From IMG/VR virus record IMGVR_UViG_3300044700_000691, positions 152,816 through 216,815 of that record: 64,000 bases of DNA. One strand, 5' to 3'. Positions within the stretch are counted from its first letter, which is position 1. Each line of letters starts with the position of its first letter. The position numbers and the translations under genes were made by a program. Of the stretch, positions 6,444-64,000 are shown piece after piece. The notes below the pieces were generated by a model. It saw only the letters and a program-made list of their open reading frames with translations. It was not told the DNA's origin and ran no database searches.

Positions 6444-7247
6444 TTACTTACCCACGGTAACTGTATCTGATAAAATTAATGGTTTTGCTAAACTTACAAC
6501 GCCTTTAGCTAGGCCTGGGGTCGACGGCATTTTGCCATCGATCATTGATGCAAGGGACTCAATTGTTGCCATAAGTGCATCTCCCATAACAGCTGGCTCA
6601 GTTAAGCCGCTTGCTCCAAGTCTAGTAAAGTCTCCTCTAAGCCATACTTGCTCAGATGTTACCCTAACCTCAGAGGTTGCTGTAATATCAACAGTTGAAT
6701 TTGCAATAATTTTAATAGTAGGACCCTCTAGTTCAATAATAGACTCAGTGTCTTTATGCTCAATTGTAATAGTTGAATCCTGAGCAATATTAATTCGGGA
6801 TTTTTTATTTTCGAATGTTAAGCCTTTGCCTACAGTAAACCACAATTTAAGCTGTTCATCGCCATCCCATAGGATAAAATGCGAACCTAAATATTCACCA
6901 TCCTTTTTTAATTCTTCCTGTAAGTCTGCCGCAAGTTCCTGTAACTGAGAATACTCAGGCGAATAAATGTCGCCTTGATCAAATGTTACAACTACAAGGG
7001 CTCCGTTTTTTGGAATAGAAATACTGGCAGCACCCTCTTTACCAAAAAATGTAGGTTTTGCCATTGGATTTGCCCAAGGAAGATCCTCAGTTTTTAGTGT
7101 ATCAAATACTCCATGCACTAAAATTTTACATCGACCCTGTTTAAGAGGATCGTTTGCATCAACAACTGTACCCATATACTTTTTTAAAATATAGTCAATC
7201 GTTGTGTCTGACGAGCGTTTAATATCTAGGTCTCTGTTTACAATCAT
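6444..7247 (-). CDS. gp5: baseplate central spike/hub protein (gp5 N-terminal OB-fold), no lysozyme domain
   Basis: [21 protein letters not shown]...LPWA...[16 protein letters not shown] motif of the gp5/VgrG OB-fold; beta-rich C-terminus. Confidence 0.8.
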
Positions 7248-8950
7248 TATGGCTTAAGTGGATTTTGACTAGTTATTTTACCTCCAACTTTCCTTTGGTT
7301 TACCGCTTTCATAATTGGAACGTCTCCTGGGAAAATATCAGTATTAATTTTTCCAATTTGGGTAATCTCCTTTCCAGGAAACATATCATTCTTGATTGGT
7401 GAAGCTGTTCTGGTGTCTTTACCTGGAAATATATCATTTTTAATTGGTAAAACAGTTCTAATGTCTTTGCCTGGGAAAGTGTCTTTTGTAATTGTACCAC
7501 CGGCCTTTCGTTCAGTTAATATCTGTACTAGCGATCCATCATATAAGTCATCATTAATTGGAGCAGCTCCTCTTTCTTTGGTAACTGCGGTTAAATCTGT
7601 TGGCGAAAACTTTTCAAATGGCCTAGAATTAAGAGGACCATTTGATAGTGCACCATCAACGGCTGCATCAAACTGTCTTTCTAGACCAAGTAGAGCATCA
7701 TTTAGGGCTCGTTGAGGAGCTCCTAATATATTAGTTAGAGCTCGACGGCCCGCGGATAACACTCTAGTTATTCCTCCAGTAAAAGGACCAAGATCAAGAG
7801 CACCGCCCAATCCTCCAAATAGTGGATTTAAGCCAGCTTCATCATCAAAGAAACCAGCTGTGCCAAATGCTTTATCGCCAAAATATGTGGCTGGCATTAC
7901 TCGATCAACAATAATTTTAATTTTAGGTTGTAGGTTACTGGAAGATTCGCCAGTCGACGATTTAGTTTGAGTTCCTGCATTTTCTAAAAAGTCTGAAAAA
8001 TCAAATTTGCAGCCCATGCATCTAAATGCAATTCCACCAAAGTTTACCTGGCCACTGAACGTTTCATCGTATTGTGCACTGGGTCCGCCAAAGCCTAAAT
8101 TAATATTAAGTCCAACATTTTCACCATTTTTTAGGAAACGTAAATCCATAAAATAGATATCCATTGAGAACTTTTCAAGATTCGGAGGCAATACCTTTCT
8201 ACCATTAAACGAATCATAACTCAATAGACGATATGCTTCGGCAAGGCGGGTTAATCTAAGATCTACTGTCTCATCTCCAGTTATTGTAAGTGTAATTGGT
8301 TCAAATTTGTAGCCTGCTTGGCAAGCTTTCCATAGGTTAGGTATTCCATCTAGTTCTTTAAATGCCCATGGAGATTTTTCTTGAATATGATTTAAAGTTT
8401 TAATAAATTCCATTAAATAGAAACCTCGGTTTAATTCGCCAGCCGGTCTATTTGTGATAGTAGAGGCTGCTGCCGAATTCAATAGTAGATTTTTAGGTAA
8501 AATTTCGTCGTTAGTTTCACTAAGTTTAAGAGAAAAACTATTCAAGTATTGAATTGCACAGGCTTCGCTGGCATTTGCAAGTAGGTCAGGAAAATTTGTT
8601 CCAGTGTTTACTTCAGTAATACCGCTTCCATCTGATGACATTTTTGCCCAGTCTGGCAAATAGAACAGTGGATTTGCTTTAAGCCCAGTGTATGGGTTTA
8701 TAGTTCCTTTAGCTTCACTTAATTGACTATGTATGTCTAGTGCAAATCCAAAATAGGTAGGTTCATCATATCCAGTCGAAAGCCTAGAATTTCTAAATGA
8801 TTGAATAATATTAGGTAATGATCTAGTATCTTTATCATTTACAACAGATGCTACCCAAGAGCTTCTTTTATCACCAGCTGTTGCGTCAGCACCCAAGGCA
8901 CTGCTATTAACATATGGATCTGGTTGTGGTTCAAAATCTGGTAATGACAT
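7247..8950 (-). CDS. putative baseplate/tail structural protein
   Basis: 567-aa ORF inside the baseplate operon with 1-nt overlap to gp5; no decisive motif. Confidence 0.5.
   Translation of the reverse strand: MSLPDFEPQPDPYVNSSALGADATAGDKRSSWVASVVNDKDTRSLPNIIQSFRNSRLSTGYDEPTYFGFALDIHSQLSEAKGTINPYTGLKANPLFYLPDWAKMSSDGSGITEVNTGTNFPDLLANASEACAIQYLNSFSLKLSETNDEILPKNLLLNSAAASTITNRPAGELNRGFYLMEFIKTLNHIQEKSPWAFKELDGIPNLWKACQAGYKFEPITLTITGDETVDLRLTRLAEAYRLLSYDSFNGRKVLPPNLEKFSMDIYFMDLRFLKNGENVGLNINLGFGGPSAQYDETFSGQVNFGGIAFRCMGCKFDFSDFLENAGTQTKSSTGESSSNLQPKIKIIVDRVMPATYFGDKAFGTAGFFDDEAGLNPLFGGLGGALDLGPFTGGITRVLSAGRRALTNILGAPQRALNDALLGLERQFDAAVDGALSNGPLNSRPFEKFSPTDLTAVTKERGAAPINDDLYDGSLVQILTERKAGGTITKDTFPGKDIRTVLPIKNDIFPGKDTRTASPIKNDMFPGKEITQIGKINTDIFPGDVPIMKAVNQRKVGGKITSQNPLKP
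7301..7492 (-). repeat. 4 x 16-aa repeat I(K/T/N)xDxFPG
   Basis: ITKDTFPGKDIRTVLP / IKNDIFPGKDTRTASP / IKNDMFPGKEITQIGK / INTDIFPGDVPIMKAV. Confidence 0.85.
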
Positions 8951-36661: not shown

Positions 36662-38653
36662 TTATCTATGGCGGTCCTCTATACTTGACTCAGCTAGACC
36701 TGTGCTATCTGCCGATGTCGTAATATTAACATGGCCATTGTCTTTAAGCTTTCCATCAATCCAAAGTTCAGCTAAGAGGTCCTCAACGTGGTTTTGAACC
36801 ATTCTTTTAATTGGCCTGGCTCCGTATTTCTCATCATAACCGTGTTCAATAATAAAGTCCTTAGCTAATTGGTCTAATTCAAATGTATAACCGTTTTCAA
36901 GTGATCTTTCAAGCAAATTTTTAAGTTCAATCTCTAAAATTTGACGAATTTCCGCTTTTTCTAGTGAATCAAAGATAATAATATCGTCTACTCGGTTTAA
37001 GAATTCCGGTTGGAACTTATTTTTAAGAGCTTTGTCTAAAACACTCTTTGCAAGTGCCCTTTCCTTTTCAATATTGTTTGCTGTTGCAAATCCAATGCCG
37101 ACTCCGCGATCTTGCAGATCCCTTACTCCAACATTAGACGTCATAATAATAACAGTGTTTCTAAAATTGATTTTTCGGCCTCTTCCATCAACTGCATAGC
37201 CTTCGTCAAGAATTTGAAGTAAACTATTAAAGATATCTGGATGAGCTTTTTCAATTTCATCTAATAAGACTACCGAATATGGCTTTCTGCGAACTTTTTC
37301 AGTTAATTGGCCGCCATCTTCGTATCCAACGTATCCTGGAGGCGCTCCCATCATTTTAGAAGCCGTAAATTTCTCTCCATATTCATTCATATCGACCCTG
37401 ATCATATTTTCTTCAGAATCAAACATTTCATGTGCTAGGGCTTTAGCTAATTCGGTTTTACCAACACCAGTTGGTCCTAAAAACATAAATGTTCCAATTG
37501 GTTTTTTCCTGGAGGCAATATTTGCTCTACTTCTCTTAATTGCTCTAGCCAGTTTCTTAATAGCCTCTTCTTGACCAATAACTCTTTTACCCAGGTCTGA
37601 TTCAAGCAAAGCAATTTTCTCAAGATCAGTTTGTGTAAGTTTTGATACTGGAATGCCAGTCATTGTTGCAACAACTTCAGCAATTTTACGATCGTCTACT
37701 TCAAGTCGATTGTCTTTTAGTGTTTTTTCCCACTCAACTTTAGCTTCATCAATTTTAGCAAGTTGATCGCGTTCAGCATCTCTTAATTTTGCAGCGGCTT
37801 CATATTTTTGTGACTCTACGGCAGTTCTTTTATTTTTTGAGATTTCTCCAAGAGCATCTTCTAATTCTCTTATTATTTGTGGAACAACTATGCCATCGAT
37901 ATGTACATTTGCGCCAGCTTCGTCTAATAGGTCAATTGCCTTGTCTGGAAAAAATCTTTCAGTTAAGTATCGATCTGCAAGTTTTACACATGCATCCAGT
38001 GCCTTTGAGCTATATGTAACAGAGTGGTGACTTTCGTAATATTCTTTAATATTTTCAAGTATTTGCCGAGTTTGTTCTGGAGTAGATGGTTCAACCATTA
38101 CCTGTTGAAATCTACGATTTAGTGCTCCATCCTTTTCAATAGATTCTCTATATTCATCTAACGTAGTTGCGCCAATACACTGAATTTCTCCACGTGAGAG
38201 TGCAGGCTTTAGGATATTTGCTGCATCTAGTGAACCGCTTGCTGAACCGGCTCCAACCATTGTATGGATCTCATCAATGAATAAGATAATATTTGGATTG
38301 GCACTTACCTCATTAATAATAGACTCCATTCGTTCTTCAAACTGGCCACGATATTTGGTTCCAGCAACAAGAGAACTAATTTCAAGAGAAACAATTCTTT
38401 TGTCAAACAAAATTCTAGGACAAGTTTTGTCAACAATCATTTTTGCAATACCTTCAACGATTGCAGTTTTACCAACACCAGGTTCCCCTATTAAGATAGG
38501 GTTATTTTTCTTGCGTCTAGATAAAATTTGACTACAGCGTTTAACTTCAGAAAGACGACCAATTACTGGGTCCATTTTTCCTTCTAGTGCAAGTTGAGTA
38601 AGGTCCTTTCCGAAATTATCTAGGACTGGTGTTCGTGCGTTTCCTTTTGTCAT
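36662..38653 (-). CDS. clpC: ClpC-type AAA+ chaperone lacking the N-terminal domain
   Basis: GEPGVGKT/FIDE (D1), GPTGVGKT/LLDE (D2), UVR-like AVESQKYEAAAKLRD, GIGF ClpP-docking loop. Confidence 0.9.
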   Translation of the reverse strand: MTKGNARTPVLDNFGKDLTQLALEGKMDPVIGRLSEVKRCSQILSRRKKNNPILIGEPGVGKTAIVEGIAKMIVDKTCPRILFDKRIVSLEISSLVAGTKYRGQFEERMESIINEVSANPNIILFIDEIHTMVGAGSASGSLDAANILKPALSRGEIQCIGATTLDEYRESIEKDGALNRRFQQVMVEPSTPEQTRQILENIKEYYESHHSVTYSSKALDACVKLADRYLTERFFPDKAIDLLDEAGANVHIDGIVVPQIIRELEDALGEISKNKRTAVESQKYEAAAKLRDAERDQLAKIDEAKVEWEKTLKDNRLEVDDRKIAEVVATMTGIPVSKLTQTDLEKIALLESDLGKRVIGQEEAIKKLARAIKRSRANIASRKKPIGTFMFLGPTGVGKTELAKALAHEMFDSEENMIRVDMNEYGEKFTASKMMGAPPGYVGYEDGGQLTEKVRRKPYSVVLLDEIEKAHPDIFNSLLQILDEGYAVDGRGRKINFRNTVIIMTSNVGVRDLQDRGVGIGFATANNIEKERALAKSVLDKALKNKFQPEFLNRVDDIIIFDSLEKAEIRQILEIELKNLLERSLENGYTFELDQLAKDFIIEHGYDEKYGARPIKRMVQNHVEDLLAELWIDGKLKDNGHVNITTSADSTGLAESSIEDRHR

Positions 38654-48950: not shown

Positions 48951-48952
48951 TG

Positions 48953-49037
48953 CGGAAGATGTAGGATTCGAACCTACGGTACCTTGCAGTACAACAGTTT
49001 TCAAGACTGCCGCGATCGACCACTCTGCCAATCTTCC
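48953..49037 (-). tRNA. tRNA-Ser(UGA)
   Basis: GGAAGAT acceptor stem, anticodon loop CT-TGA-AA, long variable arm, GGTTCGAATCC; no encoded CCA. Confidence 0.95.
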
Positions 49038-49047
49038 AGTGTATATT

Positions 49048-49302
49048 TTACCAATCTCGCTTAACGTCGTGTTTTGAAAAATTAGGTACAATATTGTACT
49101 TTTCTTGGGTTTCAATACCCTGCATTTTTTTTCGTTCGGCTGAATCAGATTCTCTTTTCTCGAGTTTAGCAATCCACAGCTTTTCTTCAGCAGTTCCCCA
49201 TTTTTTTAATTGGTCCCTAAGTGATAAAGTTTGATCGGTTCGATCAAATTCTCTAGCAAATTCGTCTTTTCCTCGATTTGGTCGTTGTTGATAATCTGCC
49301 AT
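49048..49302 (-). CDS. hypothetical protein
   Basis: 84-aa ORF between Zn-finger gene and tRNA. Confidence 0.6.
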   Translation of the reverse strand: MADYQQRPNRGKDEFAREFDRTDQTLSLRDQLKKWGTAEEKLWIAKLEKRESDSAERKKMQGIETQEKYNIVPNFSKHDVKRDW

Positions 49303-49321
49303 ATTGTGTATTTTATTTAAT

Positions 49322-49555
49322 TTAGGTTAGCCGGTTTACTATTTTCTCGTGCAACTTATGAAGATCTGTGTTATCATAGATTAGAATCTTTTCATCTCCA
49401 ACTCGACCTACTGCCTTTAGGCCGCAGCCTTCACAAATAAATCCATCTTGATAGTGTTCGTCCATCAGGCTTCCAAAGATTTGATCTGTATCAATATCGG
49501 CTGGAATATCTTCTCCCCACATTTCAGGGGCGCATTTATCACAAAAGTCTGCCAT
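49322..49555 (-). CDS. small zinc-finger protein
   Basis: FCDKC...ICEGCG. Confidence 0.7.
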   Translation of the reverse strand: MADFCDKCAPEMWGEDIPADIDTDQIFGSLMDEHYQDGFICEGCGLKAVGRVGDEKILIYDNTDLHKLHEKIVNRLT

Positions 49556-49558
49556 AGT

Positions 49559-49663
49559 TTAAAATTTACCCCATCCACTGCGGTGACGATTTTCTTCAGC
49601 TATCTTAAAGCCTAATAGAATCTCTTTGCAGATTTTTTTAATCTTATTAATTATATTCTTCAT
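49559..49663 (-). CDS. 34-aa ORF missed by track (MKNIINKIKKICKEILLGFKIAEENRHRSGWGKF)
   Basis: ATGA overlap with the upstream stop; fills gap exactly. Confidence 0.5.
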   Translation of the reverse strand: MKNIINKIKKICKEILLGFKIAEENRHRSGWGKF

Positions 49664-50733
49664 AGTAAGTGTGGTTTTGCTTCTGTTTGACCAGCATTAG
49701 TTATTTGTACCCATTTTGGGTGGTATTTTGCAAGAGAGTCAGCTCCAGCATAGGACAGAGCAGATTTAACTCCATCAATAAGGCCCTCTACTATAAATTT
49801 AACTCCGCCTTTGTATGGAATAATTGTTGATTCGCCTTCAACATTTCGTTGAGCTTGACCATGAACGGTTTTAGTTTCTAAAGAAGCTGCGCCTCTATAT
49901 CTCTTATACAAACCAGTTGACTTTTCAACAATTTGACCAGGACTCTCATGTGTTCCAGCTAAGAGTGAACCTAGCATTACTGAACTTGCTCCTAGTGCTA
50001 GGGCTTTTGCAATATCGCCGCTTGTTTTAATTCCGCCATCTGCCATTACTGGAGTTTTTGCAACTGAAACAATATCACTGATACAGGTTACGTTTGGAAT
50101 ACCAAAGCCAGTCTTAATTCTGGTTGTGCAAAGAGAACCTCCACCAATTCCAACTCGTAAGCCGTCTGCTCCCCATGATTCTAAGTCTTGAGCTGCCTCG
50201 GCCGTTGCAATATTTCCTGCAATAATATCAACGTGTTCAGGTAAATTTGCCTTACACCATTCGATCATGACCTTTACATTTATGTGATGGCCGTGTGCAA
50301 CATCAATTAAGAGGATATTTGCGCCTGCTTCAACTAGGGCCTTTGCTCTATCCATATCACTTGCCATTACACCAATTGCCGCCATAATTGGAACCTGTTT
50401 AATTTCAGCGTGCCAATCATCATACATAATTCCCCAATCTTCATATGGACCGCCGAATCCATCACCATATATTTTATAGCTCAACAATTTAACCTGATTG
50501 GCCTGCTCTTCAATTGACATAAATCTGTGAATACAGCCAACTCCGCCTAGGAGAAATAGCCTAAATGCCATTTCTAATTCGCATACCGTATCCATCGGTG
50601 AAGCAACTAGAGGTCGCATCAAGCCATATCGACGGCTCACTAGTGTATCTAATTTAATAGTTTGACGACTTGATACTTCAGAATAACCTGGTACCAATTG
50701 GATATCATCATATGTAAGAGCAGTCTTATTCAT
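49660..50733 (-). CDS. IMP dehydrogenase/GMP reductase family enzyme, no CBS domains
   Basis: LTYDDIQLVP, ASPMDTV, IDVAHGH, AGNIAT, GIGGGSLCTTR (catalytic Cys), ADGG, MLGSLLAG; start moved to MNKT. Confidence 0.92.
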   Translation of the reverse strand: MNKTALTYDDIQLVPGYSEVSSRQTIKLDTLVSRRYGLMRPLVASPMDTVCELEMAFRLFLLGGVGCIHRFMSIEEQANQVKLLSYKIYGDGFGGPYEDWGIMYDDWHAEIKQVPIMAAIGVMASDMDRAKALVEAGANILLIDVAHGHHINVKVMIEWCKANLPEHVDIIAGNIATAEAAQDLESWGADGLRVGIGGGSLCTTRIKTGFGIPNVTCISDIVSVAKTPVMADGGIKTSGDIAKALALGASSVMLGSLLAGTHESPGQIVEKSTGLYKRYRGAASLETKTVHGQAQRNVEGESTIIPYKGGVKFIVEGLIDGVKSALSYAGADSLAKYHPKWVQITNAGQTEAKPHLL

Positions 50734-51445
50734 TATCTGTAAATTTAACAAAGGTTATTTCATTAGTAATAGGGTCCCAATCGAATGTTACCGGTTTATT
50801 AACATATTCATAGTATTCATTTAGGATTGATACATTAAACCAGTGAGTGGTTCCATCAAACTTATAACCAGATCCACCGTGAATATGTCCACATACATGA
50901 ATTTTAGGTTTAACTTTAGATTGATCGATATGATTTCTCAATAGTGGACAACCTAAATTTGGTTCGTTATATGGAGGACCGCTTGTATCTAAATGACCTT
51001 GAGCTGGCCCGTGTGTAACTAAAATATCAGTATTAGTTGGAATTGCAGCCCATTTAGCAGCTAACTCTTCTCCTTGACGAGGAAGATTGAATGCCCAATT
51101 GTGAAATTCTGGTTGCCAAGGACTACCGTAGATTTTAGCTGTTTCATTATCATCTCCGACTTCAATTGTACTATCTTGCAAATAATCAATCCACTTATAA
51201 GAATTAACAATTTCCATTGATTTCTCTGGAAAATCTTCAAACATGCGGTCATGATTACCTGCAATAAAAATTTTATGGTCATATTGATCTAGTCCATCAA
51301 ACCATTTACAGAAACTGGTAATATCACCAGGATTACGTCCTGAATTCATGATATCTCCAGCATGGATTAGTAAGTCTCCACCCGGTAAATCATTGGTTAC
51401 CTCATGGTGTTTTGTGTGCGTGTCAGAAATTAACGTTATTCTCAT
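50726..51445 (-). CDS. calcineurin-like metallophosphoesterase (MPPED-like)
   Basis: ISDTH, HAGD, AGNHD, THGP, CGHIH. Confidence 0.92.
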   Translation of the reverse strand: MRITLISDTHTKHHEVTNDLPGGDLLIHAGDIMNSGRNPGDITSFCKWFDGLDQYDHKIFIAGNHDRMFEDFPEKSMEIVNSYKWIDYLQDSTIEVGDDNETAKIYGSPWQPEFHNWAFNLPRQGEELAAKWAAIPTNTDILVTHGPAQGHLDTSGPPYNEPNLGCPLLRNHIDQSKVKPKIHVCGHIHGGSGYKFDGTTHWFNVSILNEYYEYVNKPVTFDWDPITNEITFVKFTDNE

Positions 51446-51481
51446 CCTATAGTTTATTTGTGTTGATTAATACTATTATAC

Positions 51482-51511
51482 AAAAAAAGAGCAGTGATTA
51501 GCTGCTCTTTC
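51482..51511 (-). terminator. intrinsic terminator
   Basis: AAAGAGCAG/CTGCTCTTT stem with flanking tracts. Confidence 0.75.
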
Positions 51512-51535
51512 TTATACATTCTATATTTAATTAGA

Positions 51536-52093
51536 TTATCCCAATTCATAAAATTTTTCAAGAGCAGCTTGTATTCTGTCCGATATTGATGGATCAGCGG
51601 TTTCAGCGATATCTGCAATTAGTGCAATACCATTTACAATACTATCATAACCTGGAAGATATGTAACATTTTTATCCTTTTTGTACATACTTAATACATC
51701 AATTAGGGTATCTTCAATAAAACCTGCAATGGCTTCAACATTGACATTCATTGGATCCTCTCCATCTGGAGAAATAATTTCAGCATACTGTCTAACCTCT
51801 TCGCCAATCTCTGCAATTTCTTCAGCGTGCGATTTGTTATCTTGGTAAACGTCTTTCTTTTTAGTTTTAGTAACAAGATCCTTTGGAACTCTAACAATCC
51901 TTTTGCTAGAATCCAATAGTTCAATTTTAATAAAGTCATCATCCATATCAATTACTTGGCCAGGTCCTCTATAACTAGTTACATAGTCACCAGGCTCAAT
52001 ATCAGGATTTTCCTCGTTTTTCTGAAACTCTGCTTCAGGATCTTTCATAAATTTATCAAGATCAAAATCTTCGTATAGCTTAATATATTTCAT
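51536..52093 (-). CDS. acidic protein with capsid-targeting-like N-terminus and SH3/KOW-like domain
   Basis: True start MKYIKLYEDF; IEPGDYVTSYRGPGQVIDM. Confidence 0.7.
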   Translation of the reverse strand: MKYIKLYEDFDLDKFMKDPEAEFQKNEENPDIEPGDYVTSYRGPGQVIDMDDDFIKIELLDSSKRIVRVPKDLVTKTKKKDVYQDNKSHAEEIAEIGEEVRQYAEIISPDGEDPMNVNVEAIAGFIEDTLIDVLSMYKKDKNVTYLPGYDSIVNGIALIADIAETADPSISDRIQAALEKFYELG

Positions 52094-52460
52094 TGTACTT
52101 AATAATAAGTTCTCCAAGAACTTCGATTTTTCCAACTAACTTTTGAAAGTCAGTTTGCTTAATTTTAACAGTGTCTTTAGTTGAGGCAAGTTCATCAATT
52201 AAAGTATTGTATTCTTTTATTGCAGAGTCGCGATCTTCAACCGTCCAGCCCTTTTTTGCTTTTTTGTAATATGGTAACTTAACAACAAAGTGGTTATACG
52301 TTAACATTGCGTTACCGCCGCGTTCCTTTGCATTTTCTGCAATTTTAGTTGCTCCCATTAATCGGGACTCGTCAAACTCAATAAATTTCTTTTTGAGATT
52401 GTCAGTAGGTGCTTTAGCCTCATTGATAAATTCGCTAAACTGTTTAACTTGATTCTTCAT
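52080..52460 (-). CDS. hypothetical protein with capsid-targeting-like N-terminus
   Basis: QVKQFSEFINEAK; GATAAATA at 52466-52473. Confidence 0.75.
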   Translation of the reverse strand: MKNQVKQFSEFINEAKAPTDNLKKKFIEFDESRLMGATKIAENAKERGGNAMLTYNHFVVKLPYYKKAKKGWTVEDRDSAIKEYNTLIDELASTKDTVKIKQTDFQKLVGKIEVLGELIIKYNEIY

Positions 52461-52479
52461 AAGGTTATTTATCTAAACG

Positions 52480-52506
52480 AAAAAAGGACTGAATTGCTTC
52501 AGTCCT
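52480..52506 (-). terminator. intrinsic terminator after tRNA-Leu
   Basis: AGGACUGAA-GCAA-UUCAGUCCU plus U-tract. Confidence 0.85.
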
Positions 52507-52507
52507 G

Positions 52508-52592
52508 TGGTACCCTCTGAGAGACTCGAACTCTCACACCCTGCGGCACTAGATCCTAAGTCTAGCGTGTCTACCAATTCCACCAAAAGGGC
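52508..52592 (-). tRNA. tRNA-Leu(UAG)
   Basis: CTAGA-CT-TAG-GA-TCTAG anticodon arm, long variable arm, GTTCGAGTC, encoded CCA. Confidence 0.95.
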
Positions 52593-52601
52593 TTGGATTT
52601 A

Positions 52602-52811
52602 TTACTTACTTAGATACTTTTCAACGGCAGCGATGCGATCGTCTGCATCTACTAACATTGTAATAGCTTCTTCAGCATTTTTATAGAAATCTCCAGTCGA
52701 ATGGTCGCCAATTCCTACTGCATGATTACTTAATAGTTCAAGAGTTAAAAGAGCCCTTTGTCTATCTGCTTCAGCTGCGGATTTCAGCATATTTGCTAAA
52801 TGTGCTTTCAT
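52602..52811 (-). CDS. small conserved-looking phage helical protein
   Basis: 69 aa with AVGIGDHS motif; TAGTATAAT upstream. Confidence 0.7.
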   Translation of the reverse strand: MKAHLANMLKSAAEADRQRALLTLELLSNHAVGIGDHSTGDFYKNAEEAITMLVDADDRIAAVEKYLSK

Positions 52812-52834
52812 TGTATTGATTTTAATTTATTATA

Positions 52835-53095
52835 CTAATGTTTCTTATACTTTACAATTTTAATCTGAACAGTATCACCTACTCGCATTGCCTTTCGCAT
52901 AGTATAGGTTGTTCCACAGTCAGTTTTGACTCTCCATTCAGGATCAAGCTGTAATGTATGCTTTTGTCCAATTTGGAAGTATTCAACTTCCGTTATAACA
53001 CAATCCTTTTCAATAACTTCAGCAACCTTAGGCGATTCACAGCCAAGTGCAGCTAGTGTAAAAATTGTTCCAATTATAAAATATACTTTTTTCAT
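52835..53095 (-). CDS. putative lipoprotein
   Basis: Start moved to MKKVYFIIGTIFTLAALGC (lipobox); the track start lies inside tRNA-Arg. Confidence 0.65.
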   Translation of the reverse strand: MKKVYFIIGTIFTLAALGCESPKVAEVIEKDCVITEVEYFQIGQKHTLQLDPEWRVKTDCGTTYTMRKAMRVGDTVQIKIVKYKKH

Positions 53096-53107
53096 ATTTA
53101 AATTTTG

Positions 53108-53182
53108 TGGTAGTCCCGCCAAGAATCGAACTTGGATCCACTGCTTAGAAGGCAGTTGTTCTATCCGTTGAACTACAGGACC
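53108..53182 (-). tRNA. tRNA-Arg(UCU)
   Basis: ACTGC-CT-TCT-AA-GCAGT anticodon arm, GTTCGATTC, encoded CCA. Confidence 0.95.
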
Positions 53183-53190
53183 GCGTTTTA

Positions 53191-53376
53191 TTATTCTTTA
53201 TCTAATTCCTTGTATAACTTATCGCTGTACAAATTAACTAAAATAAAAAGGGTCCACCATCTGACATCAATCACATCTAGGATTGTTTTATCAAATGCGG
53301 CAAAGCATAATACAACCATTAATAACAAGTTGATAATTAACTGTGCCCAAACAAAAAACTTACTGATCTTCTTCAT
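53191..53376 (-). CDS. small two-TM membrane protein
   Basis: Two hydrophobic stretches in 61 aa. Confidence 0.6.
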   Translation of the reverse strand: MKKISKFFVWAQLIINLLLMVVLCFAAFDKTILDVIDVRWWTLFILVNLYSDKLYKELDKE

Positions 53377-53389
53377 AATTATAATATAC

Positions 53390-53983
53390 CTATTTTTTAT
53401 AAAAATATCCGTGAGTATTCCAGCCTAAATCGCAGTTAACATCTTTTTCTACTCTTCTTAAATACTTTATTCTTTTTTCTTGAGATACAAAAGGTACGCT
53501 CCAAAATTGTCTGGTTTTTGTTTTAAACCAACCAAAGACAAATGAATAAACTCCCATAACTAATCTTAGTTTAACAGAGTTTAAATATAGGGTTTGAACT
53601 GGTAGTGCCGGAGCTCCATGTGTTAAATAAGTTCTAACTTTTTTATCACTTAATAGTGGCTTTGGATAGCCGTATAATTTAGTTAAGGGTACAAAGTTAT
53701 ATGCAAATCCTGGTGTAAATACTTCATCGAAGAAAGTTTCCATTCTTGGAGTTAATCTAAACCACCATACCGGAGAAATAATATAAATTCGGTCTGACCA
53801 TGTTACCGCTTCTTTATATGATTGTATCAAATCGGTTCTTGGTCTTGCGTAATCGTCATTGTACAGATCTAATACTTTGACAGATTCATTGTTTTTAATT
53901 AGGGTATTTTCAATTGTTTTAAAAATTCCATTATAGCAAAAAGATTTGCGGTTAGGGTGCGCTATTATTATTAAATTATTCAT
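53390..53983 (-). CDS. flavodoxin-like NAD(P)H:quinone oxidoreductase (KefF/MdaB family)
   Basis: IIAHPNRKSF, VLDLY, ISPVWWFRLTPRMETFFDEVFTPGFAY. Confidence 0.85.
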   Translation of the reverse strand: MNNLIIIAHPNRKSFCYNGIFKTIENTLIKNNESVKVLDLYNDDYARPRTDLIQSYKEAVTWSDRIYIISPVWWFRLTPRMETFFDEVFTPGFAYNFVPLTKLYGYPKPLLSDKKVRTYLTHGAPALPVQTLYLNSVKLRLVMGVYSFVFGWFKTKTRQFWSVPFVSQEKRIKYLRRVEKDVNCDLGWNTHGYFYKK

Positions 53984-53984
53984 T

Positions 53985-54188
53985 TTACTTTAATTGGTTC
54001 TTGTTTATAAATTCCATATGCTTTTCCGTTTGCGGCTGAGGTGTTTCTTTAGAATTTCCCAAATCAGTACTATTATTTGTATCAGTTTTCTCATCAGTTA
54101 GCTTCTTTTTATATTGATACCAAGATGGATTCGGTAATCCGCTATAGTGATCCCAAAGATCCTCTTCTATTAAATCAACTTTACTCAT
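53985..54188 (-). CDS. hypothetical protein
   Basis: 67-aa ORF with LWDHYSGLPNP motif; 3' half may instead be an overlapping 29-aa ORF. Confidence 0.5.
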   Translation of the reverse strand: MSKVDLIEEDLWDHYSGLPNPSWYQYKKKLTDEKTDTNNSTDLGNSKETPQPQTEKHMEFINKNQLK

Positions 54189-54216
54189 TTAACAATTTTA
54201 TTAAAAACTATATTTG

Positions 54217-54291
54217 TCGGGATGGCAAGATTCGAACTTGCGACCTCCTGCTCCCAAAGCAGGCGCGATAACCGAGCTACGCTACATCCCG
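54217..54291 (-). tRNA. tRNA-Pro(UGG)
   Basis: CGGGATG acceptor, CCTGC-TT-TGG-GA-GCAGG, GTTCGAATC; no CCA. Confidence 0.95.
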
Positions 54292-60069: not shown

Positions 60070-60597
60070 TTATTTAACTATACGTCTAGCGTAATCGTTA
60101 ACCATTGGTCTACCTGTATTATAACAGCCAACCGCCAATGGCCAACTATCATATCTTTTATACAGATATGCCAAAAGTTTCATTGAAATTTGAACATTTA
60201 GTTCAAGGTTATTTAGTAATTGTTTCTTGGTTATCGGCTCATCCCAAATAAAATTTGCAGTTGGTACCTGTATCTGCATTGCACCATACGCTGCAGCAGA
60301 TGAAGTTAGCTTTGGATTGTATTTCCAATCAAATGGACCATGGTAACCTGTTTCTTCCCTTGCCACTCCCATTGCAATATGGAATGGAACATTATATTCA
60401 TCTGAATATTTCTCTAGATAATAATAAAGAGCTAAACTTGGCGGTGACTTCTCATTGATTGTTCCGCTGCTTAGCTCTTTAGTTGGTTCAGTATTAAATA
60501 GTCTCCAAAGAAAACCAAATGCTAATATTCCAGCCAATACAATGAGAGTTTTAAATGAATTTACTCCCATAATTTTAATTTTAGTGGCCAGTAGCAT
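60070..60597 (-). CDS. membrane-anchored lytic transglycosylase (SLT/GH23)
   Basis: N-terminal TM; VAREETG (catalytic Glu), AYGAMQI, AVGCYNTG. Confidence 0.85.
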   Translation of the reverse strand: MLLATKIKIMGVNSFKTLIVLAGILAFGFLWRLFNTEPTKELSSGTINEKSPPSLALYYYLEKYSDEYNVPFHIAMGVAREETGYHGPFDWKYNPKLTSSAAAYGAMQIQVPTANFIWDEPITKKQLLNNLELNVQISMKLLAYLYKRYDSWPLAVGCYNTGRPMVNDYARRIVK

Positions 60598-60910
60598 TTA
60601 CATATGCTTTTTGTGCATATATGTTAAAAATAACACGTCCGATTGAGTCTGAGTAAATTGTATAAACTCCAGTCTTTCTATCGATAATCAATAGCTCTTC
60701 CTTTTCATTTACTGCAATCGACGTACTTTTAAGAGATCTAGCTTCTCTCCAAGCTTCACCTTTAACTTTGTTTAAGGCTAATTCGTAATAATAACCAATA
60801 CAAAATCCTGCGATTAGTGCACTGGCTAAAACTGCAACTGTTCCAATTCTTTTAAGAAGGGCTGTTGCTTTTTCTGTTAGGTGTTGGGCGAAGTTTTTTT
60901 GATTTTCCAT
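60581..60910 (-). CDS. single-TM protein upstream of SLT
   Basis: Hydrophobic IGTVAVLASALIAGFCIGYYY. Confidence 0.65.
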   Translation of the reverse strand: MENQKNFAQHLTEKATALLKRIGTVAVLASALIAGFCIGYYYELALNKVKGEAWREARSLKSTSIAVNEKEELLIIDRKTGVYTIYSDSIGRVIFNIYAQKAYVNATGH

Positions 60911-61916
60911 TCTTTATTTGTTTAGGTGTATCTTTAGTCAATATACCTAGATTATAGTCAGTTTGGTCTTTGTACAATTCCCTAGCCTCAGCTAACAGAA
61001 CTGGATATGACTGGTCAATTCCTGGAAAATCTCTATCTAAATCTTCAAGAATTTTACCTAAAAGTTGAAGCCTAACGATTGCATAATTTAAGTTATGCTT
61101 TAGACCCCATATATGTAAAACATTATTAAATTTCTGTTTAACTGTATCAAGAGGTTCGGTGTGAATCCAACCTTCCATTTCTGGATCTAGGTGGGTCACA
61201 TTAATCTTTTTGCCAGGAATCCAGTCTGATTTAAGATAAGTTTCAATATTAATTCCTCGGGCTTCAGCTAAATTAGACAATAGGTATTGTTCTATAAAAA
61301 TCTGATCGCCTGCTCCAATAATAGGTTTCCACTTATCGCTATTTTCAACGATCATTTCTGCATGATACATCCACTCATGGATAAATTCGCTAGCTCCATT
61401 ACAATACAGCATTGCCGTGTTAACTGCTCTAGGCGACCATTTTTCAACTGGACTCTCTAACTCTGCAACTTTGTATAGGTCATCGCCATTTACATAACCA
61501 ACTTCTGGATATTTGTCAGCATCGGTTATTTCACCATGGAAAGTTAATATTTGTGCATCAATATTAAAAAAATCTCTAGATTTAATATAGAGATCGGTAT
61601 CGATCATGCAAAATTTATTAAAGTCTAGTGAAACGTGTTTTGCAATTAGCATTTTAGGATATGCCCAAAATCTATCATCACTTCGCATTAACACCTGTTC
61701 ATGGTGGATAGTATCAACAAACGAATAGGCATTGTGCAGACCATAGTGAAATAGCTGAGCCTCTCGTTCGGGACTAATATAGAGACCAATTGGGCCAAAG
61801 TTTTTTCTCCAATACAGAGCTGACGTTAATTGACATAGTAAATTAACTGATTTAAATATTCCTTCATCTACATCTCCTGAGTAGAATGCATGTACTCCTA
61901 ATATAGGTTCATTCAT
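60852..61916 (-). CDS. DUF6734-like / nucleotide-sugar transferase-like protein
   Basis: FWAYPKM...MIDTDLYI DxD motif, NTAML, FIEQYLL. Confidence 0.55.
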   Translation of the reverse strand: MNEPILGVHAFYSGDVDEGIFKSVNLLCQLTSALYWRKNFGPIGLYISPEREAQLFHYGLHNAYSFVDTIHHEQVLMRSDDRFWAYPKMLIAKHVSLDFNKFCMIDTDLYIKSRDFFNIDAQILTFHGEITDADKYPEVGYVNGDDLYKVAELESPVEKWSPRAVNTAMLYCNGASEFIHEWMYHAEMIVENSDKWKPIIGAGDQIFIEQYLLSNLAEARGINIETYLKSDWIPGKKINVTHLDPEMEGWIHTEPLDTVKQKFNNVLHIWGLKHNLNYAIVRLQLLGKILEDLDRDFPGIDQSYPVLLAEARELYKDQTDYNLGILTKDTPKQIKNGKSKKLRPTPNRKSNSPS

Positions 61917-61922
61917 AATTTA

Positions 61923-62195
61923 TTAAGCTAATAGCTCATTAATTTTTTCAATAATATCTGCTTGGGATTTTACGCCAACCGATTGGTGTACAGTTTCGCC
62001 TGCCTTTAAGTATACCAGGGCAGGAATTGATCTAATTCCATGTAGGGCTGCTGTATCTGGATCTTCATCCGCATTTACTTTAGTGATTTCAACTAAATCG
62101 TTTTCGTTAAACTGTTCAGCTACTTTTTCCATAACTGGACCAAATGTTCTACATGGTCCACACCATGGCGCTGAGAAATAAATTACATTAATCAT
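61923..62195 (-). CDS. trxA: thioredoxin
   Basis: FSAPWCGPC, IRSIPAL. Confidence 0.95.
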   Translation of the reverse strand: MINVIYFSAPWCGPCRTFGPVMEKVAEQFNENDLVEITKVNADEDPDTAALHGIRSIPALVYLKAGETVHQSVGVKSQADIIEKINELLA

Positions 62196-62513: not shown

Positions 62514-62602
62514 TGGTACCGACGGCCGGAATCGAACCGGCACGGGCATTACTGCCCAAGAGATTTTAAGTCTCTCATGTCTACCTGTTTCATCACGTCG
62601 GC
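62514..62602 (-). tRNA. tRNA-Leu(UAA)
   Basis: AGAGA-CT-TAA-AA-TCTCT anticodon arm, long variable arm, GGTTCGATTCC, encoded CCA. Confidence 0.95.
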
Positions 62603-62680: not shown

Positions 62681-63622
62681 ATGGGACAAAACATTAGAGA
62701 CTTTAAGTCATGGCAAAGATTAAATGAAGACACTTCATTTTTAGGATGGATTGGCGATCTTGCAACATCGGCATTTACCGGAAAGGCAGTTGAGCCTGCA
62801 CCAAGTTCAGTAACTTCAATTGCAGAACCTGGATCAACCGCAGCTGCAGTTATAGATAAGACTGCTTCTGCCCTAGGTATAAAGACTGATACTAAAGCTG
62901 ATGATAAAGAAAAATCTAAATCAGATTCTGCTAAGTCGTCTACTAAATTTAAAAAGTTTGACAAGAAAATTCCAGCAGAAAACGTCTTAGCGCTTGAGGC
63001 TGCAATGGAAAGACATGGAATTACAAATGACTTTGCAAGAAAAGCAATTCTTGGTGTAATTTCAAAAGAAAGTTCAAACTTAACTCCAGAAGGGGACTAT
63101 AGTAATACTTCAAATTCAAGAATCAGAGAAGTATATGGTGCAAGAGTAGCAGATCTTTCCGATAGTCAACTTACTGCACTAAAAGAAGAGCCTACTAAAT
63201 TTTGGGATAGAGTATATGGAGTAGACGATCCAACTGGTCGTGGTGTAAAATACGGCAATACTCAACCTGGCGATGGGGCTAGATATAGAGGTCGTGGATT
63301 TAACCAAATAACATTTAAGGCTAACTATAAAAAACTGCAAGACCTATTTGATAAAATGGGTAAGCTTAAAGCTGGTACTGAAATTAATATTGTTGAGGAA
63401 CCTGAATTACTAGAAGATCCAAATATTGCAGCTGAATTTGCAATGTTGTACTTTATTAATAGTTTTAAAGGAAAGGGTAAAGACCTAAACTCCTACAATA
63501 ATTTAGAATCTGCTGTTACTGACTATGTTCAAGCCAATGCTGGATGGGGTACAGATATTCGTGCCGGCCATAGTGCAAGAGGTTATGCAAGAGCACTAGA
63601 CTATGCATCAACTATTGCATAA
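62681..63622 (+). CDS. GH19-like lysozyme with capsid-targeting-like N-terminus (probable virion-associated hydrolase)
   Basis: AILGVISKES, GNTQPGDGARYRGRGFNQITFKANY; N-terminal NIRDFKSWQRLNE; no PG-binding domain. Confidence 0.8.
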   Translation: MGQNIRDFKSWQRLNEDTSFLGWIGDLATSAFTGKAVEPAPSSVTSIAEPGSTAAAVIDKTASALGIKTDTKADDKEKSKSDSAKSSTKFKKFDKKIPAENVLALEAAMERHGITNDFARKAILGVISKESSNLTPEGDYSNTSNSRIREVYGARVADLSDSQLTALKEEPTKFWDRVYGVDDPTGRGVKYGNTQPGDGARYRGRGFNQITFKANYKKLQDLFDKMGKLKAGTEINIVEEPELLEDPNIAAEFAMLYFINSFKGKGKDLNSYNNLESAVTDYVQANAGWGTDIRAGHSARGYARALDYASTIA

Positions 63623-63647
63623 CTTATAATAAACTAGATAAACACAG

Positions 63648-63676
63648 AAAGCCGCTAATTGCGGCTTTTTCTTTTT
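63648..63676. terminator. bidirectional intrinsic terminator
   Basis: AAAGCCGC-TAATT-GCGGCTTT plus T-tract between GH19 and tRNA-fMet. Confidence 0.85.
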
Positions 63677-63678
63677 AG

Positions 63679-63751
<73 letters not shown>

Positions 63752-63789
63752 ATATAATATTTTCAAGATGTGATTGTTGGAAAGTAAAA

Positions 63790-64000
63790 AAACGCTGAGA
63801 TTATACGTTTTAACGTTAGATCTTTACATAGGATTATTGTTTCCCTACTTATCCAGAGACTTTTGATCTCTATTCTAACAGTGCCGGTTTTTTAGGTGTA
63901 CCACTCCTTGAGCTGCGGGTTTGAACTACTCTCCTCATATTATATCTACCAGAATCTGCCGATCCCGTTAACCCTTGCGAGGCTATAGATTTTTCTGAGA
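63790..64000 (-). ncRNA. 3' part of a candidate large structured ncRNA (GOLLD/ROOL-like), truncated by window edge
   Basis: No convincing ORF; several stems (three-way junction ATCTA...TAGAT, AGAGAT/GTCTCT, TAGGG/TCCTA); ends AATCTCAGC plus U-tract just upstream of a tRNA; family resemblance is from memory only. Confidence 0.5.

What the first reader, a model, noticed from the sequence alone, without database searches (positions are those of the whole stretch)
63790..64000. Probable 3' end of a large ornate ncRNA next to tRNA-fMet
Seen (minus strand): about 210 nt, visibly richer in G+C than the flanking intergenic DNA. It has a three-way junction (AUCUA...UAGAU enclosing UAGCCU/GGGUUA and GGAUC/GAUUC hairpins), AGAGAU/GUCUCU and UAGGG/UCCUA stems, and ends AAUCUCAGC plus a U-tract about 40 nt before the tRNA. 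Known: GOLLD and ROOL RNAs are 500-800+ nt phage ncRNAs of unknown function usually found beside tRNAs, GOLLD often from lake samples. The resemblance to GOLLD is recalled, not computed. One frame is open from the edge to about 63870, so a gene end is an alternative.
Basis: partly seen in the sequence, partly recalled or inferred. Interest (0 to 1): 0.6.

Follow-up and report, generated by a model that had tools for sequence, protein, structure and literature searches.

The report
Cut-off 3' end of GOLLD RNA
The last 207 bases of the window are the tail of a GOLLD RNA, a known ~840-nt phage non-coding RNA that builds RNA-only nanocages; it is cut by the contig end, complete in identical contigs from other samples, and abundant in lake and estuary metatranscriptomes.

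Summary
Window 63792-64000 (minus strand) matches Rfam GOLLD (RF02032) at positions 216-416 of 416, with 127 bits and E 2e-35. It falls below the 150-bit cut-off only because base 64000 is the end of a 216,815-bp IMG/VR phage contig. Five other contigs of the same phage continue past this point; two are base-identical to the window over 7,320 nt. In them the full model matches at 243 bits. Homology to about 100 other viral GOLLD loci spans about 825 nt. Contigs from four independent metatranscriptomes cover L006:7114-7956 (843 nt) at 67 to about 12,900x, while the flanking genes sit at 0-12x. One run shows a template-switch signature at the 5' end. The open frame at the window edge is 58 codons stop to stop. 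There is no ROOL match. The RNA lies in a tRNA island, with 18 tRNAs upstream and an initiator-type tRNA-Met 42 nt downstream, next to an endolysin-like gene in an uncultured jumbo phage. This is a new member of a known family. By analogy with the cryo-EM work it should assemble into a 14-mer nanocage; its biological role remains unknown.

The parts
63794..64000 (-). 3'-terminal 207 nt of the GOLLD RNA (Rfam model positions 216-416 of 416). This is about a quarter of an ~843-nt RNA; the rest lies beyond the contig end.
   Evidence: 127.4 bits, E 1.9e-35, cut at the 5' side; window 64000 is the contig end; the full copy at L006:7112-7542 scores 243.2 bits. L006 is identical to the window, with window position = L006 position + 56680. 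RNA contigs end at L006:7114/7115, which is window 63794/63795.
63933..64000 (-). Outer stem (63997-64000 with 63933-63936) enclosing the three-way junction. The junction has a closing stem (63985-63988 with 63946-63949) and two hairpins at 63971-63983 (loop CGCAA) and 63950-63967 (loop CGGCAg). By position these are probably the L21a/L21b self-kissing loops of the cryo-EM structure.
   Evidence: structure line. helices 1-4: 91-96% of cells paired, and 16 of 17 pairs changed on both sides; the first loop reads CGCAA in most sequences and UCGAA in L019 and L058 (GC versus CG). Kretsch 2025 (PMC12286853) reports that same switch for L21a. The mapping to L21a/b is my inference.
63911..63926 (-). 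3' strand (GUU..CGCAGCU) of a long-range helix whose 5' strand (AGCUGCGAAC) lies outside the window, at about L006:7381-7391.
   Evidence: the full-length alignment shows the [[[ ]]] pairs; the partners are marked as missing in the window fragment.
63886..63902 (-). Hairpin GGU(ACA)-CCUAA-(AAA)ACC. Only three pairs form in this member.
   Evidence: helix 5: the outer three pairs are conserved or covary; the inner pairs are unpaired in most members.
63815..63879 (-). Long-range helix (63873-63879 with 63815-63821) enclosing hairpin UAGAGAU-CAAAA-GUCUCUG (63854-63872) and hairpin GUAGGG-AAACAAUAA-UCCUAuG (63827-63848). GGGAAACAAUAAUCC is invariant.
   Evidence: helices 6-8: helix 7 has 97.5% of cells paired and 4 pairs changed on both sides; the block is invariant in 29 of 29 sequences.
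63786..63807 (-). Terminal hairpin with the conserved loop UAUAAUCUCAG (63793-63807), followed by a U7 tract (63786-63792). This is the 3' end of the RNA.
   Evidence: helix 9: 100% paired, with 2 of 3 pairs switching between CG, GC and AU; contig ends at window 63794/63795; it does not meet the criteria for a canonical intrinsic terminator.
63678..63751 (-). tRNA-Met (CAT) of initiator type, on the same strand, 42 nt downstream of the GOLLD end.
   Evidence: Initiator hallmarks are read from the sequence.
63648..63668 (.). Two-way intrinsic terminator hairpin (GCCGC-AAUUA-GCGGC) between the tRNA-Met and the convergent endolysin-like gene. It is the first canonical terminator downstream of GOLLD.
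   Evidence: L006:6966-6990 on the + strand and 6988-6968 on the - strand, converted to window coordinates.
62681..63622 (+). Convergent 313-aa endolysin-like gene. It served as the anchor that found the full-length copies.
   Evidence: phrog_181 endolysin, E 4.6e-26; no Pfam match; related loci L006-L018.

Best explanation
Window 63794-64000 (minus strand) is the 3' quarter of a GOLLD RNA gene of an uncultured freshwater/estuarine jumbo phage. It is truncated only because the assembled contig stops there.

The complete gene, seen in base-identical contigs, gives an ~843-nt non-coding transcript with a ~414-nt 5' domain and a ~430-nt conserved 3' domain. It sits inside the phage's tRNA island and accumulates far above the neighbouring mRNAs.

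By analogy with the solved GOLLD structure, the RNA should fold without protein and self-assemble into a 14-subunit closed nanocage. The part in the window would supply:
- the ring-forming 3' domain elements;
- the two loops that probably join the two half-shells;
- the invariant GGGAAACAAUAAUCC loop;
- the UAAUCUCAG hub loop.

What the cage does is not known. The most likely role is holding or scaffolding a translation-related cargo (phage tRNAs or ribosomes) during lytic growth.

Shown here: family identity, full length, transcript presence with approximate ends, and covariation. Inferred: cage assembly. Speculative: the cargo.
For: Identity and extent:
- GOLLD RF02032, 127.4 bits, E 1.9e-35, model positions 216-416, cut at the 5' side.
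- the window end is the contig end.
- L006 and L010 are identical to the window over 7,320 nt.
- the full model 1-416 matches at 243.2 bits (gathering score 150) at L006:7112-7542.
- blastn homology of this RNA to about 100 other viral loci starts at L006 ~7930 and ends at ~7106, so both domains are conserved and the flanks are not.

Expression:
- six metatranscriptome runs from six different studies hold the sequence.
- four of them give contigs over L006:7114-7956 at depth 67 to about 12,900, against 0-12 on the endolysin-like gene and 0-66 on the 142-aa ORF.
- one 835-nt contig ends at 7956 with GGG plus adapter, a template-switch signature.

Structure and non-coding nature:
- 88.7% of cells paired, 34 of 45 pairs changed on both sides, 0 of 500 shuffles as high.
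- the 5' domain folds with z = -2.95.
- 13-23 stop codons per frame.

Setting and mechanism:
- phage hallmark genes are in the window.
- Kretsch et al. 2025 (PMC12286853) report a D7 14-mer cage, a 5' cap and 3' ring, location near tRNA islands, and expression rising during lysis.
Against: - The fragment alone scores below Rfam's gathering score (127 against 150 bits).
- A whole-genome search of the window's own record with the family found nothing, because only the truncated copy is present.
- Logan contigs cannot show strand or true RNA termini, and shared contig ends can reflect strain variation in the assembly graph. Only one run gives an adapter-supported 5' end.
- No assembly or structure data exist for this member.
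- Two related jumbo phages (94% and 100% complete) lack GOLLD, so it is dispensable in that lineage.
Confidence: 0.95

Rival explanations
1. The stretch is the 3' end of an ordinary protein-coding gene that runs off the contig.
For:: one minus-strand frame is open for 42 codons from the window edge down to 63870.
Against: -: in the identical full-length copy that frame closes at L006:7364-7366, giving 58 codons stop to stop.
- every frame has 13-23 stops across the 843-nt RNA.
- the longest ORF with a start codon on that strand is 61 aa.
- the substitutions among homologues are paired, compensatory changes in helices, not codon-like.
Confidence: 0.01
2. It is a ROOL RNA or another ornate phage RNA rather than GOLLD.
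For: ROOL also lies near tRNAs in phages (Kretsch 2025).
Against: -: at an E-value limit of 10 the only large-RNA match is GOLLD; ROOL is not listed.
- the full copy passes GOLLD's gathering score end to end.
Confidence: 0.01
3. It is a true GOLLD-family sequence but a decayed or truncated remnant in this phage, so the contig end reflects a real genomic boundary and no functional RNA is made.
For:: the record is classed as linear and 84% complete, and it ends inside the element; the other end of the contig does not carry the missing 5' part.
Against: -: five other contigs of the same phage from other samples run straight through the break with a complete GOLLD. Two of them are 100% identical over the 7.3 kb that overlaps the window.
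- the complete RNA is abundant in four metatranscriptomes.
- the fragments do not reach the contig's other end, so the gap is simply unassembled.
Confidence: 0.03

Closest known systems
GOLLD RNA (Rfam RF02032). First described by the Breaker laboratory (per Kretsch 2025; the attribution to Weinberg et al. 2009 is from my own memory). Cryo-EM structure of env-38 in Kretsch et al. 2025, PMC12286853.
   Same: - A full covariance-model match in the complete copy.
- About 840 nt, with a conserved 3' domain and a 5' domain.
- The invariant GGGAAACAAUAAUCC and UAAUCUCAG loops.
- Phage-encoded, in a lake-type sample, inside a tRNA island, and next to a Met tRNA as env-38 is (Kretsch places env-38 downstream of its Met tRNA; here the tRNA follows the GOLLD end).
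- High RNA abundance.
   Different: - A new sequence: 65-73% identity to other viral GOLLDs outside its own species-level group.
- A 6-nt insertion (CAAACC) in the long-range helix, shared with only two loci in the 29-sequence alignment, L072 and L076.
- One hairpin is reduced to three pairs.
- No tRNA sits inside the linker, unlike L026 and L028.
- The host is a ~250-kb uncultured jumbo phage.
ROOL RNA
   Same: A large ornate phage RNA near tRNAs that forms an RNA-only cage (an octamer).
   Different: Unrelated sequence and secondary structure. No match here.
GOLLD copies in huge-phage genomes (for example LR745206.1, 635 kb)
   Same: blastn similarity of about 70% in both the 5' and 3' domains (H1; L030).
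   Different: A different phage. The major head protein of this phage is only 33-40% identical to those of deposited huge phages.

Membership tests
GOLLD RNA (RF02032) | Covariance-model score at or above the gathering score of 150 bits | tested here: met
   The window fragment scores 127.4 bits, with E 1.9e-35, covering only model positions 216-416. The complete copy in contigs identical to the window scores 243.2 bits over positions 1-416.
GOLLD RNA (RF02032) | A giant RNA (about 800 nt or more) with a universally conserved 3' domain and a less conserved 5' domain | tested here: met
   RNA contigs cover L006:7114-7956, which is 843 nt. Homology to other loci runs from ~7930 to ~7106. Some loci match only the 3' part, which fits a more variable 5' domain.
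GOLLD RNA (RF02032) | Ornate secondary structure supported by covariation | tested here: met
   For the 45 pairs inside the window: 88.7% of cells paired, 34 pairs changed on both sides, 0 of 500 shuffles as high, and slid controls at 0.144 or below against 0.474. The 5' domain was tested only by folding energy (z = -2.95).
GOLLD RNA (RF02032) | Encoded by phages or prophages, often beside tRNA islands | tested here: met
   Major head, portal and protease genes are in the window. There are 18 tRNAs upstream and 2 downstream in L006, and 6 in the window.
GOLLD RNA (RF02032) | Non-coding and expressed as a discrete abundant RNA | tested here: met
   13-23 stops per frame. Four metatranscriptomes give 67 to about 12,900x on the RNA against 0-66x on the flanking genes. 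Strand and exact ends cannot be proven from contigs.
GOLLD RNA (RF02032) | Self-assembly into a D7 homo-14-mer nanocage | not testable with these tools
   Known for env-38 only. Here only the conserved loops and a GC/CG switch in the probable L21a loop are seen.
ROOL RNA | A match to the Rfam ROOL covariance model | tested here: not met
   There is no ROOL row at E up to 10 on window 63600-64000. There is none at the gathering score on the window or on L006-L010.

The most novel reading that the evidence does not exclude
GOLLD and a CAT-anticodon tRNA (here an initiator-type tRNA-fMet 42 nt downstream, with the first canonical terminator only after the tRNA) may form a conserved co-transcribed module. 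The cage would then act on translation initiation or on tRNA-Met handling during infection, rather than being a generic container. Support is thin. In 25 sequence clusters of viral GOLLD loci, 7 have a same-strand tRNA within 300 nt downstream, and 5 of those 7 read CAT, against 17% CAT among all tRNAs in the same loci (p = 0.002, not corrected for shared ancestry).
Probability: 0.1. Interest if true: 0.7.

Novelty: new member of a known kind. Interest (0 to 1): 0.3.

Why it matters
GOLLD is one of very few natural RNAs known to build a protein-free cage, and its function is still open.

This locus adds no new principle, but it is a well-defined natural example:
- a complete ~843-nt copy in a widespread lake and estuary jumbo phage;
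- embedded in a tRNA island of about 20 genes;
- with evidence from environmental RNA data that it accumulates far above the neighbouring genes.

It also shows that the apparent oddity of half an RNA is an assembly edge.

Tried and rejected
- The Rfam gathering-score scan of the whole window found only six tRNAs. The truncated GOLLD appears only with the E-value threshold.
- A search of the window's own record with RF02032 found nothing, so it is blind to the cut copy.
- I looked for the missing 5' part at the other end of the contig, in case the genome is circularly permuted. There was no GOLLD and no tRNA in C1:1-6000.
- The three longer sibling contigs do not reach that end.
- blastn against deposited phages gave mostly tRNA-Met matches and one weak GOLLD match.
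- The sigma-70 promoter scan gave no more sites than shuffled sequence, and none placed for a start at L006:7956. The promoter is therefore not identified.
- The terminal hairpin plus U7 tract does not qualify as a canonical terminator.
- The abundant RNA piece at L006:8107-8250 has no Rfam match and no fold signal. It is left unexplained.
- The published inter-subunit contacts were not mapped residue by residue.

Full report
**What is there**

- ARAGORN and Rfam place a tRNA-Met (CAT) at 63678-63751 on the same strand.
- A scan of the whole window at Rfam gathering scores found only six tRNAs.
- Rescanning 63600-64000 with an E-value threshold gave GOLLD (RF02032) at 63792-64000. The match scores 127.4 bits with E 1.9e-35, covers model positions 216-416 of 416, and is flagged as cut at the 5' side.
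- ROOL is not among the matches at E up to 10.

The Rfam structure line contains:
- the AGAGAU/GUCUCU stem;
- the UAGGG/UCCUA stem;
- a terminal hairpin whose loop holds AAUCUCAG, followed by U7.

**Why only half**

The window is G000:C1:152816-216815 of a 216,815-bp IMG/VR virus record, so base 64000 is the end of the contig.
- The missing part is not at the other end of the contig.
- I used the convergent 313-aa neighbour gene (62681-63622) as an anchor. This found five further contigs that encode the identical protein.
- L006 and L010 are identical to the window over all 7,320 overlapping bases. Window position equals L006 position plus 56680.
- In all five contigs the full GOLLD model matches at 243.2 bits, above the 150-bit gathering score, at L006:7112-7542.
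- The full alignment shows that window 63911-63926 is the 3' strand of a long-range helix whose partner lies beyond the window.

**Full extent and expression**

- blastn of L006:8260-7100 against all fetched loci shows homology to about 100 other viral contigs. It starts at L006 ~7930 and ends at ~7106. Both a ~414-nt 5' domain and the Rfam-modelled 3' domain are therefore conserved, while the flanks are not.
- Six metatranscriptome runs from six different studies hold the sequence.
- I laid four of them on L006:5500-10000. Their contigs cover 7114-7956 at word depths of 67 to about 12,900. The endolysin-like gene is at 0-12 and the upstream 142-aa ORF at 0-66.
- Contigs end at 7114/7115 in two runs.
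- An 835-nt contig ends at 7956 with GGG plus Illumina adapter in RNA sense, which is a template-switch signature of an RNA 5' end.
- A minor form reads through to 8108 in one run.
- Contigs cannot prove strand or termini. The flank contrast does argue against DNA carry-over.
- The RNA is 43.1% G+C against 30% for the upstream flank and 35.9% for the genome.

**Not coding**

- The frame open at the window edge closes at L006:7364-7366, giving 58 codons stop to stop.
- Each frame has 13-23 stops across the RNA.
- No minus-strand ORF with a start codon exceeds 61 aa.

**Structure**

- A pattern built from two invariant loops found 116 stretches in IMG/VR.
- I aligned the window fragment with 28 diverse representatives and counted the 45 Rfam pairs that lie inside the window.

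| Measure | Observed | Control |
|---|---|---|
| Cells paired | 88.7% | 70.2% in shuffles |
| Pairs changed on both sides | 34 of 45 | - |
| Covariation score | 0.474 | 0.163 in shuffles; at most 0.144 with slid partners |
| Shuffles reaching the observed values | 0 of 500 | - |

- The weaker helices are a hairpin that forms only 3-4 pairs in most members, and a long-range helix that MAFFT misaligns.
- The 5' domain folds better than shuffled sequence (z = -2.95).

**Setting**

- The window carries major head, head protease, portal, helicase and ATP-dependent protease genes.
- The head protein is 33-40% identical to those of uncultured huge phages and Lak phages.
- GOLLD lies in a tRNA island. 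There are 18 minus-strand tRNAs within 4.4 kb upstream, then a 142-aa ORF, then GOLLD, then the tRNA-Met, then a two-way terminator.
- The tRNA has a C1xU72 mismatch, A11:U24, and GGG/CCC in the anticodon stem. From established knowledge of bacterial tRNA-fMet, these are initiator hallmarks.
- Two jumbo phages whose homologue of the anchor protein is 48-55% identical lack GOLLD, although their records are 94% and 100% complete.

**How it probably works**

Kretsch et al. 2025 (PMC12286853) report the following for GOLLD:
- It folds without protein into a D7 14-mer cage 380 A across.
- The 5' domains form the caps and the 3' domains form the rings.
- The two half-shells are joined by two self-kissing loops (L21a, L21b) and an A-minor contact.
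- Expression rises during lysis.
- Possible cargo includes tRNAs or ribosomes.

By model position, the two junction hairpins in the window are probably L21a and L21b.
- The first loop reads CGCAA in most sequences and UCGAA in two. That is the same GC/CG switch the paper reports.
- The second loop, GGCA, is nearly invariant.

Cage assembly for this member is inferred, and its biological role is unknown.

**Verdict**

The truncation is an assembly edge.

Noticed in passing
L006:8107-8250 (beyond the window end; would be window ~64787-64930): A second abundant piece in the RNA contigs, lying between the 142-aa ORF and GOLLD. Depths are 4843 in X15, 115 in X17 and 13 in X18, with a shared boundary at 8107-8110. 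It has no Rfam match and no fold signal on either strand (z about +1). It is conserved only in contigs of the same species.
   Followed up: partly
80 distinct GOLLD loci among L019-L139; in the window, tRNA 63678-63751: When a same-strand tRNA follows GOLLD within 300 nt, it usually reads CAT: 17 of 19 loci, or 5 of 7 sequence clusters, against 17% CAT among all 223 tRNAs in these loci. The anticodon stems differ between clusters, so not all of these tRNAs are initiators. The test is not corrected for shared ancestry.
   Followed up: partly
L026:322-390 and L028:1567-1635: A tRNA-like insert scoring 33 bits sits inside the GOLLD match of another phage. This fits the published remark that tRNAs sometimes sit in the GOLLD linker. 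The RNA in this window has none.
   Followed up: no
window 36662-38653 (-): A 663-aa protein matches phrog_4871, 'ATP-dependent protease', at 797 bits. It is a large AAA+ protease gene in a phage genome.
   Followed up: no
window 60070-62195 (-): A small cluster lies just upstream of the tRNAs: an SLT lytic transglycosylase (60070-60597), a DUF6734 protein (60852-61916) and a thioredoxin (61923-62195). The convergent 313-aa gene next to the tRNA-fMet is endolysin-like in PHROGs only.
   Followed up: no
window 48952-54291 and 62514-62602 (-): Five more tRNAs (Ser-TGA, Leu-TAG, Arg-TCT, Pro-TGG, Leu-TAA) are scattered among genes on the same strand. With the 18 beyond the contig end, the phage carries at least 24 tRNAs.
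   Followed up: partly
L006:7506, 7842, 7867: Strain variants inside the GOLLD RNA appear in the RNA contigs: A>G at 7506 in two runs, and T>C at 7842 with C>T at 7867 together in one contig. I did not check whether they preserve pairing.
   Followed up: no
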